Part shown: positions 2 through 29,351 of the stretch, in pieces
Layout of the letters: every line of letters starts with the position of its first letter
Numbering within the stretch: the stretch's first letter is position 1
IMG/VR virus record: IMGVR_UViG_3300024336_000005
Span: 140,009-204,008 of that record
Length of the DNA stretch: 64,000 nt
Strand: one strand, 5' to 3'
Notes under the pieces: model-generated
What the model was told of the DNA's origin: nothing
Seen by the model: only the letters and a program-made list of their open reading frames with translations
Database searches by the model: none
Translations under genes and position numbers: made by a program

Positions 2-349
2 GCGCGCGAGGTCGATCTTCTCTTGCAGAGGATTGAACTAAAGCTCCACCCACGTAAGGTAAAGCTTATGCCATACTATCAGAGACAGATTGTCACTGGC
101 ATTGTGGTAAATAATGAAAAATTGACGCTACCTAGATGGTACAAAGAGGAACTCTTCCTTGCTACAAAGGGAGAGGATCCGTCTACCTTCGATGAACAAT
201 TCAGGGGTGTTCTTGAGTATGTTCGTTCGGTAGATTCACAATTCTATAAAAAAATGTGCAACCATATGATTGCACCAAAGGAGAATGAAGATGGCAACAC
301 TTCCAGAGTGGATCACAGAGGTCCGATTTTATGCAACGACTCCCAGTAG
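2..349 (+). CDS. Retron-type reverse transcriptase, C-terminal fragment (5' end outside window)
   Basis: Frame open from base 2. LKLHPRKVKLM...RQIVTGIVVN..KLTLPR matches RT domain 7 with the retron VTG signature and start of the thumb. The YADD motif is not in the window. Confidence 0.75.
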   Translation, partial: AREVDLLLQRIELKLHPRKVKLMPYYQRQIVTGIVVNNEKLTLPRWYKEELFLATKGEDPSTFDEQFRGVLEYVRSVDSQFYKKMCNHMIAPKENEDGNTSRVDHRGPILCNDSQ

Positions 350-650
350 TGACCGCGCCCCTCAGGCACGCGGTTCAGTAACATTTGCTGGTGCTGTTTA
401 CTCACAGTTCACAGTCTGGCAGTCAAACGATGGCGCCCTTCAGGTTGTACTGCCGAGAGTAAAGAACCCAAAGTATAATCCTGACGAAGCTCACTCGAAG
501 ACCAACAAGATGTACTTCGAAGAGGTTGGTTGTACCAGCGGAGAGAAGAGGGAAGAGCTTGGCAAGGCTATCATTGGAAGCCTTCTCGAAGAGAGGAAGG
601 CGACTCCAGTCAAGGAGAGCAACACAGGTTCGGACGGCATTCCGTTTTAA
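291..650 (+). CDS. SpoVG-like (PC4/whirly-fold) nucleic-acid-binding protein with SSB-like tail
   Basis: ITEVRF...ARGSVTF...FTV..SNDGALQVVLPR...REELGKAII follows the SpoVG pattern. Ends GSDGIPF. SD AAGGAG at 278-283 before ATG 291. Confidence 0.6.
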   Translation: MATLPEWITEVRFYATTPSSDRAPQARGSVTFAGAVYSQFTVWQSNDGALQVVLPRVKNPKYNPDEAHSKTNKMYFEEVGCTSGEKREELGKAIIGSLLEERKATPVKESNTGSDGIPF

Positions 651-660
651 GGAGTAGCTC

Positions 661-963
661 ATGAAGATTGAAGACGTCAAGTTCCTCAAGAGTGACTGCA
701 CTGTCTCTGGCGCTATCGTAGATAACGTTGGACGTGGTGAAAATCGTTCGCCCCGTTGGGGCGGAGGAATTCAAGGAACAATTGTAGGGAATAATTTTCT
801 GGGGCAGGGAGTGAATGCTGTAACAATCATTCATCATCCCACTCAGATTACAACCACAGTGGACACCTTTACTCCGAAGAGGAACAAAGAGCTTGCCTTC
901 ATTAAGCTCGAGATGCTTGTCAACAAGTGGATCGAAGAAGTTAAGGCGCGGATGGGCTCCTGA
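661..963 (+). CDS. Peptide release factor (RF-1 domain)-like small protein, GGQ degenerate
   Basis: LGQGVNAVTIIHHPTQITTTV...KRNKELAFIKL resembles RF GGQxVN..SAVRITHLPTGI.V...QHKNKxxA. SD AAGGAG upstream. Confidence 0.5.
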   Translation: MKIEDVKFLKSDCTVSGAIVDNVGRGENRSPRWGGGIQGTIVGNNFLGQGVNAVTIIHHPTQITTTVDTFTPKRNKELAFIKLEMLVNKWIEEVKARMGS

Positions 964-1283
964 TGGGAGTCTTCAGCATGGCTCGCACTCAAGCCTTGGC
1001 AACTGCCTTCTCAAAGGCAATTGGAGAGACAGAAGGCTTGCATGATGTTGAGATTGCCTACGCCTTAGCAGCAACGATGCGTGGTCTTGGTGAAGTGCTA
1101 TACGATAAAGAAGACACCTCTAAGGAGGCTGTCCTCGAAGACTATGCAAGCTCACCAAGTTGGGCTGGAGCTTTAATGATACATGCAGATCAAATCCATG
1201 TAATCAGAGAGCTTTTCATTCGGACAAAAGAATCCAATATAGATGAAGGAGTTGAAACAGACTCCAAGGAGACAGACGAATAA
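963..1283 (+). CDS. Hypothetical protein
   Basis: ORF coupled to both neighbours (TGATG and TAATG overlaps). Confidence 0.7.
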   Translation: MGVFSMARTQALATAFSKAIGETEGLHDVEIAYALAATMRGLGEVLYDKEDTSKEAVLEDYASSPSWAGALMIHADQIHVIRELFIRTKESNIDEGVETDSKETDE

Positions 1284-1855
1284 TGGAGCAGGAACAGTTT
1301 GATACACTAGTTAGAGGGATCTCAGCGGTCCTTGATAATGTAAGGACCCCACAGTTTCGCCCTCCCTCAGTAAACTTCTTCATGCCTAATCGAGGCCAGC
1401 TGCAGTTTACAATCGCCGCTCCACGTTATCGTGAAGTTGAGCGAAAGAATCCTAAGGATGCTGGAGTTCGCTGGGCAGATAAGATGGGAGCGGTCTTCGT
1501 TGAGGCAGCTCCTGCCTTGCCGAACTCAGACAAGCTGGACTGGGACAATAAGAAGATGATCTTTGCCATGTCAGACAAGGACATCGGCCAGGTCCTTTGG
1601 GGCTTTGCTGCCAAGAAGGAAGACATCCGACTTGTTCACGCTCCTGATGAAAATGCAAAGCAAAACAATAAGACCTTCCGAATCCGAAAGGGAGATGACT
1701 TTAGAGGCGAGCCTCAGTGGATTCTATCTCTTACGGAAAAGAAGAATGGAGAGTCAAATGAAGTCTCTGTGTTCATCAAGGGACCGGATATGATGAGACT
1801 CAAGTCGCTGTTGGAGGGAGCAATTCCCTACATACTGGGCGCCCATCGAACTTAG
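1283..1855 (+). CDS. Whirly-family ssDNA-binding protein
   Basis: GAVFVEAAPA...DWDNKKMIFAMSDKDIG...LVHAP...IPYILG parallels plant Whirly G.VLLQFAPA...YDW.RKQVFSLSVTEIG...FFHDP...PYLLGW. Confidence 0.7.
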   Translation: MEQEQFDTLVRGISAVLDNVRTPQFRPPSVNFFMPNRGQLQFTIAAPRYREVERKNPKDAGVRWADKMGAVFVEAAPALPNSDKLDWDNKKMIFAMSDKDIGQVLWGFAAKKEDIRLVHAPDENAKQNNKTFRIRKGDDFRGEPQWILSLTEKKNGESNEVSVFIKGPDMMRLKSLLEGAIPYILGAHRT

Positions 1856-1864
1856 GAGAATCAG

Positions 1865-2380
1865 TTGCTATTGTGGCTGTACCTTTTGTCACTTCCCTTG
1901 ATGGCTTGCCAGCCATACTCAGACAGCTATTACTCACATCTTCCTGATGCAGAGCACAGAAGTGCGACCTGCCAAAAAGGTGTGAGTATAGGCATGCTGT
2001 ATGGTCTGGATCCTGAGATGGTTGCTGCTCTTCTAATGGAAGAGCAAAGGCATGCCGATAAAGATTATGAGGGCGGCATTCGCGGTCCTTTCCAAGTGTC
2101 AGCAAAAGATTGGTGTGAGGGCGGAACGTTTTCCACCTGTGCTGATCTAAACATTGCTGGTGCAAGAGCAATATCTCTTTTAAGAAATTGCTCAAAAATA
2201 AACTGGTCTAATTATGAATGCAAAAGGGAGAGGCGTAAGCCTCTTCCTTGGAGCAAGGTCCTCTGTCACTATGCCTCTGGCAACAAGTGCACAAAGAAGG
2301 GACTTGCTTACACCAAGCGTGTTATGAGATGGAGAAATAATGTCCGACGCTACAGTAGACTACGACTTGCTAGAAGGTAA
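1865..2380 (+). CDS. SLT/lytic transglycosylase-like protein with N-terminal hydrophobic signal
   Basis: YGLDPEMVAALLMEE (catalytic Glu region), GPFQV, NIAGARAI and HYASG motifs. Confidence 0.6.
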   Translation: MLLWLYLLSLPLMACQPYSDSYYSHLPDAEHRSATCQKGVSIGMLYGLDPEMVAALLMEEQRHADKDYEGGIRGPFQVSAKDWCEGGTFSTCADLNIAGARAISLLRNCSKINWSNYECKRERRKPLPWSKVLCHYASGNKCTKKGLAYTKRVMRWRNNVRRYSRLRLARR

Positions 2381-2846: not shown

Positions 2847-3297
2847 CATCAAGGGAGGGTTTGAATGGGAGGTTGTCTCCTGTTGGGATGACTTCGCCGA
2901 TGCTCTTGGGGTGTTTAAGGTTTATGCAGAGGATGGTGCGCCAAGACCTGGTGTTCACATTGACCTTAAGTGGCCAAGTCCTACGACATTCATAAAGAAG
3001 CCCGCGCTAAAAGAAAAGGTGTGGGCAGACATAGAGACTAAGCTTGTCCCCTTGTTTCATAAGAAGGCTCCTGATAGGGAGCCTCTTGTCCTTACGGACC
3101 ATCAGCTTCAAACAATCCTAAAGCTCCTTGGGGAGGCAAAGATTCCATTTGAAGTAGACCATCCCAATGGATCAGTCATAGGGATAAATAAGAACCATGG
3201 GGTGGAGTACAGTTTAACTTCTGCAGACGTTGCCTCTATGGTGGCTGCTGCTTGGCTATTCAAGTCTGGCTCGGTACGCCTCGAACGAAAAGAGTAG
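2773..3297 (+). CDS. Hypothetical protein
   Basis: 174-aa ORF in the co-oriented gene run. Confidence 0.6.
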   Translation: MKILIYVKKNQQEPLSIVSKALRDSIKGGFEWEVVSCWDDFADALGVFKVYAEDGAPRPGVHIDLKWPSPTTFIKKPALKEKVWADIETKLVPLFHKKAPDREPLVLTDHQLQTILKLLGEAKIPFEVDHPNGSVIGINKNHGVEYSLTSADVASMVAAAWLFKSGSVRLERKE

Positions 3298-3311
3298 TCA
3301 AGGAAAGGTAG

Positions 3312-3470
3312 GTGCTGTTTAGCAAGTATGCTAAATTAGTAGTAGGTTACTTTGTATATGGTGCGGCGAGAGAGACGTCATTTAGAATTCATGGCGTCCT
3401 CAAAGAAATGGCTGAGCCAAACTTAACCTTAAATTCTGATTTTGAATATGTTATCTATAGCATTGATTGA
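3312..3470 (+). CDS. Small hypothetical protein (52 aa, below ORF-track cutoff)
   Basis: GTG at 3312 after purine-rich AGGAAAGG; reads MLFSKYAKLVVG...YSID* and fills the apparent gap. Confidence 0.5.
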   Translation: MLFSKYAKLVVGYFVYGAARETSFRIHGVLKEMAEPNLTLNSDFEYVIYSID

Positions 3471-3479
3471 AGAAGGCAG

Positions 3480-4220
3480 ATGGATTGGAAAGAAAGACCA
3501 GCAAAGCAGAAGGCAAGAGATTGGCTGCTGTCGCAGCTGGACCTAAAGAGGGTAGACACATACCTAGGCCTCCCCGCAGGAGAGGCCATCTTCGAGAGGC
3601 TCTTAGTAAAAGAACATCCCGTATCTTCAATGGAACTCTTTGAACGAGATTTGGACGTAGCTGAATATCTTAGGGAAAGCATCTTTGCTTATAACCTAAG
3701 AGGGACGACTCTTCCCGAATGGAAGCACGCTCGTAGCGTAATAGTGAATGAAACAGACGTAGACGTCTGGCTGGGTCTGGCGAGAGAATTCGCTCCGTCC
3801 TTCCCCTCTTACGATCTTGCTTGGTTGGACTACTGTGGTCCGATTACCTCTACGAGATTAGAGAACCTTCAAAACCTTGCCGAAGCCATGCCAGATGATG
3901 GAGTCCTTGCGGTCACATTTATGGCTTGCAGAGAAGGGGCTGAGGTGTTTGGCGAAATGGTAGAGGCCGACTCTTCTGTTGCTATCATTAGGAAGAACAG
4001 AAGGTCGGATGCAGAGACTCCAGAGAAGCATCTCAAAAGAATTAGAATTGTTACAAACGCTCTCCTTGAGAAGACCTTTCCCTTGAGGATAAAGGTACTT
4101 CCCTATCAAGATGGAGCTCCAATGTTGTTGTTTGTAATCAAGAAGTCAGACAGCAAAAGAGGGATTGTTTCTCTCGCACGAAGGACTTCTGTAGAGGTCC
4201 TTCCATCACTAAAGGATTAA
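3480..4220 (+). CDS. Class I SAM-dependent methyltransferase-like protein
   Basis: YLGLPAGEA (motif I-like), MELFERD (acidic end of strand 2), YDLAWLDYCG (motif IV-like), DGVLAVTF. Confidence 0.55.
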   Translation: MDWKERPAKQKARDWLLSQLDLKRVDTYLGLPAGEAIFERLLVKEHPVSSMELFERDLDVAEYLRESIFAYNLRGTTLPEWKHARSVIVNETDVDVWLGLAREFAPSFPSYDLAWLDYCGPITSTRLENLQNLAEAMPDDGVLAVTFMACREGAEVFGEMVEADSSVAIIRKNRRSDAETPEKHLKRIRIVTNALLEKTFPLRIKVLPYQDGAPMLLFVIKKSDSKRGIVSLARRTSVEVLPSLKD

Positions 4221-26420: not shown

Positions 26421-28141
26421 TTGTAAAGTTCGACTTTCTGGGACTCCGCACACTTGATGTAATTGAAGACGCCTGTCGTAGCATAGAGAAAAGAACTGGA
26501 GTGACTATTGATTGGGAACAGACTCCCGAGGATGATGGTCCTACATTCGATATGCTCAGCAGAGGAGACACCTTTGGTGTCTTCCAGCTGGAGGCATCTG
26601 GTATCTCTGGGTTTACCAAGGGATATAAGCCAAGGTCTATCGATGACATCTCAATCATCTCAGCTCTATACAGACCTGGTCCGCTGGATAATGGGATGGT
26701 AGATGCCATTCTGTCTGTCCGCAAGGGGAAGAAGATTGAAGAGAGTCCTGTTGATGTCATTAAAGAAATCCTTAAGGATACGAATGGGGTTCTGACATAT
26801 CAGGAACAAGTATTAGCAATATCAAGGGAGATGGCTGGGTTTACCCTGTCGGGTGCTGATCTATTGAGGCGCGCGATTGGCAAGAAGCTGCCCGAAGAGA
26901 TGCAAGCGCAGGAGCAAAACTTTGTTGATGGCTCCGTAGAGAAGGGGTATCCAAAGCATCAAGCTTTGGAAGTATTTGAAATCATTAAGAAATTCGCTGA
27001 CTATTGTTTGTCATATGATACTAAGGTATTGACCGATAAGGGGCCTCTCTCAATTGGTCATATTGTAGAAAATCAGCTAGAGGTTTCTGTTTATTCTATT
27101 GATGAGCATGGGCTTGTCTACTCTCAGCCGGTGGCTCAGTGGCATGACAGGGGCATAAGAGAAGTCTTTGAATACAAGCTTGAGGATGGCTCTGTCATCC
27201 GAGCGACCGAAGATCATAAGTTTATGACCGTCGATGGAGATATGCTTGCTATTGAAACAATCTTCCTGCAGAATAGGGATATGCTTGTCATTGAAACAGG
27301 CAAGATTCAAATAGGGGAGATTGAAATGAAGCCTTATAATAAACTAAATGACCTGGACAAACAACTTGTCCAACGACTGTACTATGAAGGATTATCCTTT
27401 GAGGACATCTCAAAGGAAGCTGTGGTATCTCAACGTTCTGTTAGTCGTGTTTTGCAAGAGGCTAATATTAACACCAGAAGGAAAAACCGTTATACCCTTA
27501 ATGAAAGCTTCTTCTGTGGAGCATATGATCATTATGAATGTGCATATTTTTTAGGCCTACTGGCAGCAGATGGATGCGTTACTCATAAGGATTACATCGC
27601 CCTCCAGCTTATTGATGAAGAACTTGTCTTATGGTTTCGCAAAGCGATCGAATACTCAGGAGAAGTTCGGCTTATCCTTGGCGAGGAGCGAAAGCCCCCT
27701 GGCCAAGATGCCTATAGGGTGAACTTTAGCTCTGCCATAATGTCAGAGGAACTTCGTTCATATGGAATCATTGCCGGAAGACATCTTCAAGCAATTCCGA
27801 AGTTAGAAGATTCAATTGTGCCTCATTTTATTCGAGGGTATTTTGATGGAGATGGATGTGTTTACTTAAGGCCAGAGGGTTCTGGTGGAGTTGTTCATAT
27901 TGTAGCCTCCGAGGCGTTTTGCGAATCGCTTAAAGAATACTTTGGATTCGGAACAATTAGTTCACATCCCAGTGGTATGTATTATTGGAGGATCTTTGCA
28001 AAAAAACATGTGAATGTTTTTTATGAAGCCCTATATGATTCTGATGGTTCAGAGACCCTGTGCCTTAATCGCAAAAAGCAACTAATGGAAGCCTTCCTAC
28101 GGAGCTACAAGTATGAAAATTGTTGGAAAGCAAAGGATTGA
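26421..28141 (+). CDS. dnaE: DnaE exon 2 + N-intein + in-frame LAGLIDADG endonuclease
   Basis: KFDFLG, GVFQLE, ALYRPGP, YQEQV, ADLLRRAIGKK, FADY then CLSYDT (intein start 27005). The frame ends at stop 28141. Confidence 0.92.
27005..27300 (+). mobile_element. Split intein N-half, Npu/Ssp DnaE-type
   Basis: CLSYDTKVLT...QPVAQWHDRG..EVFEY.LEDGS.IRATEDHKFMTVDG.ML.I..IF (blocks A and B). Confidence 0.92.
27326..28141 (+). CDS. LAGLIDADG homing endonuclease with N-terminal HTH (own SD/ATG, in frame with IntN)
   Basis: SD AGGGGAG at 27313-19; YFLGLLAADGCV and FIRGYFDGDGCV; LNRKK. Confidence 0.85.
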   Translation: MKPYNKLNDLDKQLVQRLYYEGLSFEDISKEAVVSQRSVSRVLQEANINTRRKNRYTLNESFFCGAYDHYECAYFLGLLAADGCVTHKDYIALQLIDEELVLWFRKAIEYSGEVRLILGEERKPPGQDAYRVNFSSAIMSEELRSYGIIAGRHLQAIPKLEDSIVPHFIRGYFDGDGCVYLRPEGSGGVVHIVASEAFCESLKEYFGFGTISSHPSGMYYWRIFAKKHVNVFYEALYDSDGSETLCLNRKKQLMEAFLRSYKYENCWKAKD

Positions 28142-29351
28142 GGATCAATCAGTCTATGATATTGGAGTAGAAAAAGACCATAACTTTCTTCTTGCTGATG
28201 GACAGGTTGCTTCCAATTGCTTTAACAAAAGCCATAGTGTGGCCTATTCAATGCTTTCATATAGAACAGCTTATCTTAAGTGTCACTATCCTTCTGACTT
28301 CTATGCTGCAGAGCTTACGAGCCACGAAGGGGAAGTCAAGAAGCTTCTCCCAGCAATGGCAGATGCTCGAGCACACCACATGAAGATCAAGACTCCTGAT
28401 ATTAATCTTAGTGAGGAGTGCTTTACGGCGACCGCCAGACATGAAATAAGGTTTGGACTTGCTGGAATTAAGGGGCTTGGGACAAAGGCTCTTCAGTCTA
28501 TTATGAATGAAAGAGCCAATGGGAGTTTTGAGTCTATCACTGGCTTATGCAAGAGGCTCTCCTCTTCTGAGATTAAGTCGAATAATCTCACAGCCTTAGC
28601 AAGGTCTGGTGCATTTTCCCAAATAGAAACTGGAATGAACACAGCAGAGCTTGCAGAGTATGCCGTTAACACAGCGATTGCTCTTCGTAGCTATCATAAA
28701 GATGAGAAGAAAGGCCAGGTGTCTATCTTTTCTGTTATGACTGAAGCTCCAGAAAATGAGATTAATGTTCAGAGACCGTCAATTCATTTGGATGATGGAG
28801 ATGAACTGGAGCTAGAGAAGGAAGCCTTGGGCTTTTATATCTCAGGATCTCCTCTGGATAAGTACAATACTATTAAGGAAAGATCCCATATAGATGAAAT
28901 TGAAAGCTTAGAAGTTGATGGCATTTGGGTATCAGTTCTTGCCAGGATAACAGAGCTTAAGATTAGAAATGGAAAGAGGGGAAGCTTTGCAATACTACAG
29001 CTAGAAGATACTAGCGGCAGCATTGGAGCTAAGATTTGGTCTAACAATATGGCTGAAGCTCGTCCATACTTAGAAGAAGGTAAGAGTGTTGTTGTCAGAG
29101 GAAAGACAAACTCCTACAAAGGACTTGAAATTGTTGTGGATTCTATTGTAGACGCTGAATCAGAAGTGAAAAGACTTTTGAAGAGAGTGGTCATTCATAG
29201 ACTTGATTCCACGATTTTAAATACACTCTTGCAATTGCCTGCAGGAAATGTTCCTATAGATCTTGAGCTTTCAAATGGCCAGATCAAACAACGACTTGGA
29301 TTTTTTGAAATCCAACCCCACATGCTGAGGGAACTGAATGAGATGGACTGA
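28113..29351 (+). CDS. dnaE: Split intein C-half (35 aa, 28113-28217) + DnaE C-terminal extein (HhH, OB)
   Basis: SD GGAG at 28101; MKIVGKQ...VYDIGVEKDHNFLLADGQVASN|CFNKSHSVAY; PDINLS, IRFGLAGIKGLG, EKEALGFYISGSPL, LEDTSG. Confidence 0.93.
   Translation: MKIVGKQRIEDQSVYDIGVEKDHNFLLADGQVASNCFNKSHSVAYSMLSYRTAYLKCHYPSDFYAAELTSHEGEVKKLLPAMADARAHHMKIKTPDINLSEECFTATARHEIRFGLAGIKGLGTKALQSIMNERANGSFESITGLCKRLSSSEIKSNNLTALARSGAFSQIETGMNTAELAEYAVNTAIALRSYHKDEKKGQVSIFSVMTEAPENEINVQRPSIHLDDGDELELEKEALGFYISGSPLDKYNTIKERSHIDEIESLEVDGIWVSVLARITELKIRNGKRGSFAILQLEDTSGSIGAKIWSNNMAEARPYLEEGKSVVVRGKTNSYKGLEIVVDSIVDAESEVKRLLKRVVIHRLDSTILNTLLQLPAGNVPIDLELSNGQIKQRLGFFEIQPHMLRELNEMD

What the first reader, a model, noticed from the sequence alone, without database searches (positions are those of the whole stretch)
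2..1855. Phage retron-type RT directly upstream of SpoVG-like, RF-like and Whirly-like genes
Seen: the RT C-terminus has the VTG motif and overlaps the SpoVG-like gene by about 60 nt; the following genes are closely packed or translationally coupled. Known: retron RTs make branched ssDNA (msDNA) and normally partner an effector in bacterial anti-phage defence. Inference: a phage-borne retron-like RT next to two putative ssDNA-binding proteins and a release-factor-like protein could be a counter-defence decoy, a phage-competition system or an ssDNA-producing module. It could also be a chance insertion in a core operon.
Basis: partly seen in the sequence, partly recalled or inferred. Interest (0 to 1): 0.65.

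Follow-up and report, generated by a model that had tools for sequence, protein, structure and literature searches.

The report
Retron-type RT core to marine phages
The window opens inside an intact retron-family reverse transcriptase that is a fixed core gene of an uncultured group of about 204-kb marine phages, wedged between a ubiquitin-like conjugation cassette and unusual nucleic-acid-binding proteins, with no retron RNA or toxin partner found.

Summary
Window 2-349 is the C-terminal third of a reverse transcriptase (RT) cut by the contig end. A near-identical 204-kb contig supplies the whole 284-aa gene, with the NAxxH, YADD and VTG motifs. It aligns end to end with solved retron RTs (Ec86, E 9e-49).

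- a SpoVG-fold protein, which also ends in a bacterial SSB-type tip (D-x-I-P-F);
- a release-factor domain-3 fold without the GGQ motif;
- a true Whirly protein.

The RT is neither a chance insertion nor a relic. All 14 genomic contexts examined carry the same gene string, down to 36% RT identity. The catalytic and retron motifs are kept in 37-39 of 39 clade members.

That gene closes a PRTRC-like cassette of ubiquitin-like protein, JAB peptidase and E1.

No msr-msd RNA and no known retron effector was found. Retron membership is therefore shown for the enzyme only.

SpoVG proteins with an SSB tip are far more widespread than this RT, and the phage has no OB-fold SSB. The downstream binders are therefore probably general phage proteins.

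My best reading is an active retron-lineage RT tied to the ubiquitin-like cassette. Its template and role are unknown.

The parts
2..349 (+). C-terminal 115 codons of the retron-family RT. The full gene is 284 aa at L003:5788-6642 on the near-identical 204-kb contig. About 505 nt of it lie before the window's first base.
92..100 (+). VTG motif of RT motif 7 (in ...RQIVTGIVVN...).
   Evidence: VTG is kept in 39 of 39 clade members.
278..349 (+). Lineage-specific C-terminal extension of the RT (about 24 aa). It overlaps the ribosome-binding site and the start of the next gene.
   Evidence: The RT alignment shows that relatives end about 24 residues earlier. Junction sequence.
291..650 (+). pA: a 119-aa SpoVG-fold protein with a disordered linker and an SSB-type C-terminal tip.
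   Evidence: Model pLDDT 80.5. The ten best Foldseek hits are SpoVG 2ia9/2i9z/2i9x. Atlas result. No Pfam hit.
633..647 (+). C-terminal tip D-G-I-P-F of pA. It resembles the D-D-D-I-P-F tip of bacterial SSB (the E. coli motif is from my own knowledge).
   Evidence: All 7 orthologues end this way. So do 21 of 23 family members and 64 of 114 representative clusters by a strict pattern.
661..963 (+). pB: a 100-aa protein with the fold of class-I release factor domain 3. The GGQ loop is replaced by a variable, low-confidence loop.
963..1283 (+). pC: a 106-aa conserved helical protein of unknown function.
   Evidence: Conserved in 7 orthologues, with a distant copy in L017 by the family HMM. The L011 copy rests only on my reading of its translation. 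No family or fold match.
1283..1855 (+). Whirly-family ssDNA-binding protein, 190 aa.
   Evidence: Pfam PF08536, 30.2 bits against a cut-off of 23. Profile against StWhy2 3n1h, 3.5e-6.
1865..2380 (+). Next gene of the string, 171 aa. Its orthologue has a weak lytic-transglycosylase (SLT) hit. Listed as context, not as part of the module.

Best explanation
SHOWN.
The window begins inside an intact retron-family reverse transcriptase. It is a vertically inherited core gene of an uncultured clade of about 204-208-kb marine phages.

The gene sits in one tightly packed, same-strand string:
- a PRTRC-C-like ubiquitin-like protein ending in Gly;
- two unknown proteins;
- a PRTRC-B-like protein;
- a JAB peptidase;
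- a ThiF/E1 enzyme;
- the RT;
- a SpoVG-fold protein with an SSB-type tip;
- a GGQ-less release-factor domain-3 protein;
- a helical unknown;
- a Whirly protein.

INFERRED.
1. The enzyme is active. It has kept the retron-specific NAxxH and VTG motifs, so it probably still primes cDNA synthesis on an RNA as retron RTs do, and makes a small single-stranded DNA during infection.
2. Its functional partner is the upstream ubiquitin-like conjugation cassette. This cassette takes the place that a toxin effector holds in bacterial retrons. The RT start overlaps or abuts the E1 stop. Two unrelated viral retron-type RTs also lie within a few kb of JAB/ThiF genes.
3. The downstream SpoVG-SSB-tip and Whirly proteins are mainly the phage's own general single-strand binders, since the genome has no OB-fold SSB. 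The RF-like protein belongs with the phage's translation toolkit (about 28 tRNAs and a tmRNA). They may handle the cDNA, but they are not dedicated to it.

The template RNA and the biological role (counter-defence, phage competition or genome establishment) are not identified.
For: RT identity:
- The full 284-aa gene was recovered from a near-identical 204-kb contig; the 213 aa held in the window's contig match it 100%.
- PADLOC retron RT models score 1e-58.
- NCBIfam retron_St85_RT scores 1.8e-56, against group II 6e-20 and Drt2 7e-16.
- The profile aligns over positions 2-259 of 263 with solved Ec86 RT residues 48-304, E 8.9e-49. Ec83, Ec78, Kva2, Ec67 and Eco8 follow.

Activity:
- Of 39 clade members, YADD is kept in 38, NAxxH in 37 (the two without it are fragments) and VTG in 39, at 36-55% identity to the window's RT.

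Core gene:
- A starred (99) set of 33 RTs plus two sisters, 35 tips in all.
- The same string is found in all 14 contexts.
- Genomes are 204-208 kb and come from seawater.

The cassette:
- ThiF matches PRTRC_ThiF at 7.9e-29 and the JAB protein matches PRTRC_A at 8e-13.
- The Ubl matches PRTRC_C in 4 of 8 members.
- p232 matches PRTRC_B in 1 of 8 members.
- The Ubl ends in K-G in all members, and two carry short extensions after it.

Link between RT and E1:
- The stop and start overlap or abut in most loci.
- JAB and ThiF lie near unrelated RTs in L021 and L077. ThiF itself is rare in phages: 13 of 50,697 records.

Downstream genes are general:
- The complete genome has no PF00436 SSB.
- There are 114 representative clusters of SpoVG-like proteins, most with the tip.
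- The genome carries a tmRNA and many tRNAs.

Expression:
- Identical short contigs across the string occur in a seawater RNA library.
Against: - No msr-msd was found. Rfam gave nothing. No conserved intergenic sequence exists among 9 loci. RNAalifold found no shared structure at the ThiF/RT junction. The RT-pA spacers are not conserved.
- All full-module contexts belong to one syntenic phage lineage, so co-occurrence is confounded with common descent.
- L017 has an extra 207-aa gene between ThiF and the RT.
- The L024 and L075 JAB/ThiF hits are weak, and deep FastTree placements are unsure.
- A co-fold of ThiF with the RT gave no verdict. This counts neither way.
- RNA-library contigs cannot exclude carried-over DNA.
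- No retron is known to use a ubiquitin-like effector. This rests on my own knowledge and on one literature search with a single irrelevant hit.
Confidence: 0.4

Rival explanations
1. The RT and the three downstream proteins form one ssDNA-producing module: the RT makes msDNA-like ssDNA, the SpoVG-SSB-tip and Whirly proteins coat it, and the complex acts as a decoy or sensor in phage-host or phage-phage conflict.
For: - RT, pA, pC and Whirly stay adjacent even in the most distant relatives, L011 and L017.
- pA and Whirly homologues reached independently of the RT always had the RT beside them.
- Junctions are tightly coupled.
- pA carries an SSB-type tip that could engage host SSB-interacting proteins.
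Against: - All these contexts come from one syntenic lineage.
- The SpoVG-plus-tip class is far larger than the RT clade.
- The phage has no OB-fold SSB, so it needs these binders for replication anyway.
- pB is replaced by, or absent beside, a tmRNA gene in L011 and L017.
- Many relatives have a non-conserved spacer or small ORF between the RT and pA.
Confidence: 0.2
2. Synteny only. The RT works alone, or with an unlinked RNA elsewhere in the 204-kb genome. Every neighbour, including the ubiquitin-like cassette, is functionally unrelated.
For: - Gene order in this phage lineage is conserved over tens of kb, from ClpP to the ribonucleotide reductase.
- No ncRNA lies next to the RT.
- The co-fold of ThiF with the RT gave no support (not evidence either way).
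- A long unexplained hairpin lies in a 1.3-kb ORF-free stretch 52 kb away.
Against: - The E1 stop and RT start overlap in many members.
- JAB/ThiF lie near RTs of other lineages in L021 and L077.
- Characterised retrons have the RT, RNA and effector adjacent (my own knowledge).
Confidence: 0.3
3. Replication role. The RT supplies primers or cDNA intermediates for phage genome replication or repair, together with the non-canonical single-strand binders.
For: - It is a core gene of the clade.
- It lies in a region rich in DNA-metabolism genes: dCMP deaminase, ribonucleotide reductase, RecA-like, dUTPase.
- SpoVG domains occur fused to protein-primed family-B polymerases.
Against: - The phage encodes its own DNA polymerase, primase-helicase and exonuclease.
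- No retron RT is known to serve replication (my own knowledge).
Confidence: 0.08
4. The RT is an inactive relic or an assembly artefact.
For: In the window and its contig the gene is cut at the 5' end.
Against: - The complete gene is present on the 204-kb contig and in a 203,906-nt contig of an independent run.
- The motifs are conserved across 39 homologues.
Confidence: 0.02

Closest known systems
Bacterial retrons (for example Ec86/Eco1, St85/Sen2, Ec83, Ec78)
   Same: - The RT is colinear with solved retron RTs from motif 1 to the end of the thumb.
- It has NAxxH, YADD and VTG.
- It scores far above group II intron and DRT models.
   Different: - No msr-msd was found beside it.
- None of the five downstream ORFs or four upstream ORFs scanned matches a PADLOC retron-effector model; the only PADLOC hits are ThiF's weak E1-E2 matches.
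- It fits no single retron type: types III-A, XI, XIII, XII and II-A all score 184-197 bits. It is below NCBIfam's cut-off for the St85 family (191.5 against 235).
- It lacks the roughly 47-residue N-terminal lead of Ec86.
- It is a core gene of a lytic-looking 204-kb phage, not part of a defence island.
PRTRC (ParB-related, ThiF-related cassette) of plasmids and integrative elements
   Same: The ThiF, JAB (protein A), Ubl (protein C) and protein-B-like components are present in cassette order. A plasmid example is shown.
   Different: - All scores are below NCBIfam's curated cut-offs.
- No ParB-related gene was seen in the locus.
- It is followed by an RT, which the plasmid cassette lacks.
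- The function of PRTRC itself is unknown.
Retron-like RTs noted in other viruses (clusters RTC3 and RTC5 of PMC13681634; MarsHill-like Staphylococcus jumbo phages, bioRxiv 10.1101/2020.12.14.422802)
   Same: A retron-lineage RT in a large phage, with no DGR features and no known role.
   Different: - The Staphylococcus enzyme is 501 aa with an N-terminal extra domain.
- The best match of my RT fragment in a Staphylococcus phage record is about 30% identical.
- Neither paper, in the passages I read, describes the ubiquitin-like cassette or these neighbours.
SpoVG (PF04026), bacterial SSB, class-I release factors/ArfB/PrfH, plant Whirly
   Same: The folds of pA, pB and the Whirly protein match these families, and pA has an SSB-type C-terminal tip.
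   Different: - pA is not an OB fold and is below Pfam's SpoVG threshold.
- pB lacks GGQ and the codon-reading domains.
- The Whirly protein is viral and only distantly related to the plant proteins.

Membership tests
Retron (RT component) | RT of the retron clade with motifs 1-7 and a YxDD catalytic site | tested here: met
   PADLOC 1e-58. Ec86 structure sequence 8.9e-49, end to end. YADD in 38 of 39 members.
Retron (RT component) | Retron-specific NAxxH and VTG motifs | tested here: met
   NALPH and VTG are present in the full gene. N56, A57, H60, V200, T201 and G202 are invariant in 8 orthologues. NAxxH is in 37 of 39 and VTG in 39 of 39 members.
Retron (whole system) | An adjacent msr-msd non-coding RNA with a1/a2 inverted repeats and a priming G | tested here: inconclusive
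   - There is no intergenic space next to the RT.
- No Rfam match.
- Inverted repeats near the RT are short and no better than chance.
- No conserved non-coding sequence in 9 loci.
- No shared structure at the ThiF/RT junction.
- The hairpin at L003:1965-2155 is strong (z -5.7) but lies in a coding frame and is not conserved.
Retron RNAs evolve fast, so this absence is not proof.
Retron (whole system) | Production of branched msDNA | not testable with these tools
   Only assembled contigs of public runs were available, with no raw reads.
Retron (whole system) | An accessory effector of a known retron type | tested here: not met
   PADLOC found nothing for the five downstream proteins scanned or for three of the four upstream ones. 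ThiF gave only weak matches to CBASS-type E1-E2 models.
PRTRC system | ThiF-family E1, JAB (protein A), Ubl (protein C) and protein B in one cassette | tested here: inconclusive
   Each is the best NCBIfam hit but below the curated cut-off. ThiF scores 100.7 against 144.75 and protein A 48.4 against 101.8. Protein C matches in 4 of 8 members at 3e-5. Protein B matches in 1 of 8 at 4.5e-5.
PRTRC system | A ParB-related component | not tested
   None of the ORFs scanned in L003 matched ParB in Pfam. The wider genome was not searched for it.
SpoVG (PF04026) | SpoVG fold | tested here: met
   Foldseek ranks 1-10 are all SpoVG structures, probability 1.00. Atlas structure TM 0.66.
SpoVG (PF04026) | A match to the Pfam model above its threshold | tested here: not met
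   No Pfam hit at E 0.1. No PDB sequence-profile hit.
Bacterial SSB | OB-fold DNA-binding domain | tested here: not met
   pA has a SpoVG fold. The whole 204-kb genome has no PF00436 match.
Bacterial SSB | A disordered linker and an acidic C-terminal tip ending I-P-F | tested here: met
   Residues 106-117 have pLDDT below 50. The tip is present in 21 of 23 family members.
Class-I release factor / RF-1 domain (PF00472) | Domain-3 fold | tested here: met
   The profile hits RF2, PrfH and RF1. All Foldseek hits listed are release-factor-family chains.
Class-I release factor / RF-1 domain (PF00472) | The catalytic GGQ motif | tested here: not met
   The loop is variable and has no GGQ in any of 7 orthologues. 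Residues 19-49 have pLDDT below 50.
Whirly (PF08536) | A match to the family model above its threshold | tested here: met
   30.2 bits against 23. Six distinct plant Whirly chains (about a dozen PDB entries) match at 3.5e-6 to 5e-3.

The most novel reading that the evidence does not exclude
A phage-borne 'retron' whose effector is a ubiquitin-like conjugation machine rather than a toxin. The RT and its cDNA would gate or guide the PRTRC-like Ubl/E2-like/JAB/E1 cassette, which tags host defence proteins or competing-phage proteins. The SSB-tip SpoVG and Whirly proteins would protect the cDNA. This would be the first functional link between reverse transcription and ubiquitin-like conjugation, and the first role for a retron-type RT on the virus side.
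Probability: 0.15. Interest if true: 0.9.

Novelty: new variant of a known kind. Interest (0 to 1): 0.62.

Why it matters
Retron RTs are understood as bacterial anti-phage devices made of an RT, a non-coding RNA and a toxin. Here the same enzyme lineage, with its retron-specific motifs intact, has been kept as a core gene by a whole clade of large marine phages. It has no recognisable RNA or toxin, and it is welded to a ubiquitin-like conjugation cassette whose own function is unknown.

If the two work together, three things become testable at once:
- what viral retron-like RTs do;
- what PRTRC cassettes do;
- whether reverse transcription can be coupled to protein tagging.

Separately, the SpoVG-fold proteins with a bacterial SSB tip appear to be a widespread, undescribed class of phage single-strand binders.

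Tried and rejected
Search for the retron RNA, all negative:
- Rfam at permissive E-values on the 12.6-kb locus found only chance hits. At gathering score on the 143-kb contig plus the other 55 kb of the complete genome it found only tRNAs, a tmRNA and a twister ribozyme.
- An inverted-repeat search gave short pairs only.
- The 'gap b' at window 3297-3480 turned out to hold a small conserved ORF.
- The spacer between the Ubl gene and p96 holds only differing terminator-like hairpins.
- The RT-pA spacers are not conserved and partly encode a variable small protein.
- An all-against-all blastn of 53 intergenic pieces from 9 loci found only tRNA and tmRNA.
- RNAalifold on the ThiF/RT junction of 10 loci predicted 0 pairs.
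- A sliding-window z-score scan showed strong local structure almost everywhere, with mean z of -0.6 to -1.7 across the nine loci, so it did not discriminate. An earlier version of the scan timed out.
- The strong hairpin at L003:1965-2155 (z -5.7) was rejected as an msd. It lies in a conserved though fast-evolving ORF, and L004 and L010 show no such structure.

Other attempts:
- The idea that the RF-like pB replaces a tmRNA was weakened. The window phage has its own tmRNA elsewhere.
- The co-fold of ThiF with the RT gave no verdict (score 0.22, mark 0.32). I do not count it either way.
- pC and p196 remain unidentified. The p232 and Ubl profiles found nothing in the PDB.
- No cultured relative of the phage was found by DNA, primase-helicase or Whirly searches.
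- The sigma-70 promoter and terminator scan was no better than shuffles.
- Literature searches for an RT with ThiF/JAB, and for PRTRC function, found nothing relevant.

Procedure:
- It ran.
Full report
1. WHAT IS IN THE WINDOW

Window 2-349 (+) is a frame open at its 5' end. It encodes 115 residues with VTG at 92-100 and a stop at 347-349.

The window is bases 296-64,295 of a 143,154-bp viral contig estimated 70% complete. The same frame runs on to that contig's first base, giving 213 residues with the LPQG...SP and YADD motifs. This piece matches Pfam RVT_1 at 1e-13 and many PADLOC retron RT models at about 1e-36. The contig's other end does not hold the missing start.

A scan of IMG/VR found a 204,008-bp contig that encodes these 213 residues identically. 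CheckV rates it 100% complete. On it the gene is whole: L003:5788-6642, 284 aa, starting at RT motif 1 and containing NALPH, the retron NAxxH motif. An independent run holds the stretch in a 203,906-nt contig.

2. THE ENZYME IS A RETRON-FAMILY RT AND LOOKS ACTIVE

- The full protein scores 1e-58 against PADLOC retron RT models. Types III-A, XI, XIII, XII, Ec107-like and II-A all fall within 184-197 bits, so no type stands out.
- In NCBIfam the best model is retron_St85_RT (191.5 bits, below its cut-off of 235). Next come Ec67 and the TIR-retron. Group II intron RT scores 72 bits and Drt2 58 bits.
- A profile of eight orthologues aligns over positions 2-259 of 263 with residues 48-304 of the solved Ec86 RT (8.9e-49). 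Ec83, Kva2, Ec78, Ec67 and Eco8 follow, well ahead of group II and DRT enzymes.
- Of 39 members of its clade, YADD is kept in 38 (one has YCDD), NAxxH in 37 (the two exceptions are fragments) and VTG in all 39, although identity to the window's RT falls to about 36%.

This pattern indicates an enzyme under purifying selection, not a relic.

3. IT IS A CORE GENE OF ONE PHAGE LINEAGE

A search of 5.8 billion proteins found about 30 short relatives (252-269 aa, 38-54% identical). There is then a drop to ordinary bacterial retron RTs at 35-40% identity over three quarters of the length.

In a FastTree of 198 RTs, 33 of the short relatives form a starred set (support 99). Together with two more distant sisters, L011 and L017, they make 35 tips under one node.

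I looked at 14 genomic contexts. Ten were reached through the RT and four through the SpoVG-like or Whirly protein. All carry the same string:

ClpP ... Ubl (60-70 aa) - p96 - p196 - p232 - JAB (about 375-620 aa) - ThiF (about 340-390 aa) - RT - [optional small ORF] - pA - pB - pC - Whirly - ... - amidase - ... - ribonucleotide reductase

The phages are 204-208 kb and come from seawater metagenomes. They have no cultured relative in GenBank. The phage has its own DNA polymerase, primase-helicase and exonuclease. 'Chance insertion' is therefore excluded.

All these contexts are still one syntenic lineage. Even L011 and L017 share distant downstream genes with the window phage. Co-occurrence alone therefore cannot prove functional coupling.

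4. THE DOWNSTREAM GENES

pA (window 291-650)
- The model has pLDDT 80.5. Its ten best Foldseek matches are all SpoVG crystal structures, and the Atlas agrees. Pfam and PDB sequence profiles see nothing.
- After a low-confidence Gly/Ser-rich linker, every orthologue ends in D-x-I-P-F or a close variant. So do 21 of 23 family members. This is the form of the bacterial SSB C-terminal tip; the E. coli motif D-D-D-I-P-F is from my own knowledge.
- An exhaustive profile search found 114 representative clusters of this SpoVG-like family. By a strict pattern, 64 end in such a tip. That is far more than the RT clade could account for.

pB (661-963)
- Its profile hits RF2, PrfH and RF1 over the strand-helix part of domain 3. 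All Foldseek hits listed are chains of the class-I release-factor family.
- The GGQ loop is variable and is modelled with low confidence.

pC (963-1283)
- It is conserved but unidentifiable.

The 190-aa protein (1283-1855)
- It is a Whirly-family member.

Genome background
- The complete genome has no OB-fold SSB, and a gp32 search was silent (its control was silent too).
- It carries about 28 tRNAs and a tmRNA.

I read pA and Whirly as the phage's general single-strand binders, and pB as part of a translation toolkit. In L017, and probably L011, a tmRNA gene lies between pA and pC where pB would be. Because the window phage has a tmRNA elsewhere, I give this little weight.

- The gene before the RT is a ThiF-family E1 (Pfam 2e-12). 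Its best NCBIfam model is PRTRC_ThiF (7.9e-29).
- The gene before that has a JAB motif and matches PRTRC protein A (8e-13).
- The 60-70-aa protein at the head of the string ends in Lys-Gly in every member, two with short extensions. Four of eight members match PRTRC protein C.
- One p232 orthologue matches PRTRC protein B.

All these scores are below the curated cut-offs, so I call the cassette PRTRC-like. A plasmid PRTRC cassette has no RT.

The E1 stop and the RT start overlap or abut in most loci. L017 has an inserted gene between them.

Among 78 other viral retron-type RT loci, two have clear JAB and ThiF genes within 1.5-6 kb of an RT that lies outside the core clade: L021 and L077. Two more have weak hits. 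ThiF is found in only 13 of 50,697 GenBank phage records. This is the only signal of linkage that does not rest on the clade's own synteny, and it is why I favour the cassette as the RT's partner. A co-fold of ThiF and the RT gave no verdict.

6. THE MISSING RNA

Every test for an msr-msd was negative or inconclusive:
- Rfam;
- inverted repeats;
- conserved non-coding sequence;
- a shared structure at the ThiF/RT junction;
- the RT-pA spacers.

Two strong hairpins were seen. One, at L003:1965-2155 (z -5.7), lies inside the p96 frame and is not conserved. The other lies in a 1.3-kb ORF-free stretch after the tmRNA, 52 kb from the RT, and its conservation could not be tested.

Retron membership is therefore shown for the enzyme and not for a system.

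7. EXPRESSION

A seawater metatranscriptome holds twelve short contigs, all at least 99% alike to the reference, spread from the Ubl gene to pC. This is compatible with transcription. It does not exclude carried-over DNA, and it shows no dominant small RNA.

8. VERDICT

The finding is a new variant of a known kind: a retron-lineage RT fixed in a clade of large marine phages, coupled to a ubiquitin-like conjugation cassette, with template and role unknown. The literature held here notes retron-like RTs in viruses without assigning a function. It holds nothing on an RT with ThiF/JAB.

Noticed in passing
L003:1742-5788 (upstream of the window, on the 204-kb contig): A PRTRC-like cassette in a phage: a 60-aa ubiquitin-like protein ending K-G, two unknown proteins, a PRTRC-B-like protein, a JAB peptidase and a ThiF E1. 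The E1 stop overlaps the RT start.
   Followed up: partly
window 291-650, and 114 representative protein clusters elsewhere: SpoVG-fold proteins of about 100-125 aa, with a disordered linker and a bacterial SSB-type C-terminal tip (D-x-I/L/V-P-F), appear to be a widespread class. By the Atlas they are mostly viral. 64 of 114 clusters carry the tip by a strict pattern.
   Followed up: partly
L017:7513-7966 and L011 about 3655-4066: A tmRNA gene (71 bits in L017, with a tag ending VAVAA; a partial hit in L011) sits between the SpoVG-like and pC genes, in the slot where the window phage has the RF-like gene. ARAGORN missed both.
   Followed up: partly
G001:85,869-86,490, and tRNAs between about 84.3 and 132 kb (L108-L110): The complete version of the window phage carries a 622-nt tmRNA (83.5 bits, with a long insertion) and about 28 tRNA genes. 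These lie in the 60 kb that the window's contig lacks.
   Followed up: partly
L108:8013-8148 (G001:86,812-86,947), within an ORF-free stretch L108:7700-9000: A near-perfect long hairpin (arms of 16 bp perfect plus 27 bp at 89%). The region has z -5.5 and matches no Rfam family. It resembles an msd in shape, but it is 52 kb from the RT and its conservation is untested.
   Followed up: partly
L003:1965-2155: A very stable structure (-73.9 kcal/mol, z -5.7) inside the p96 reading frame. It is not conserved in L004 or L010.
   Followed up: yes
G000:C1:119,684-119,751 (+), outside the window: A Twister-P5 ribozyme match, 50.7 bits against a gathering score of 37.6.
   Followed up: no
window 26501-28141 and 28113-29351: The DNA polymerase is split over two ORFs. 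The first also carries an endonuclease-like C-terminal half (phrog_4645), which suggests a homing-endonuclease or intein-type interruption.
   Followed up: no
window 3312-3470: A small conserved ORF (52 aa, motif G-Y-F-[VI]-[YF]-G-A-A-R-E) fills what looks like an intergenic gap. It is present in most relatives.
   Followed up: partly
L021:9494-9569: A tRNA with anticodon CTA (an amber suppressor, called tRNA-Pyl by ARAGORN) lies 3 kb downstream of another retron-type RT in a 177-kb viral contig that also has JAB and ThiF genes nearby.
   Followed up: no
window about 42,000: AT skew changes sign and coding switches from the + strand to the - strand. The - strand part holds long genes, only one of which gave a (structural) PHROG match.
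   Followed up: no
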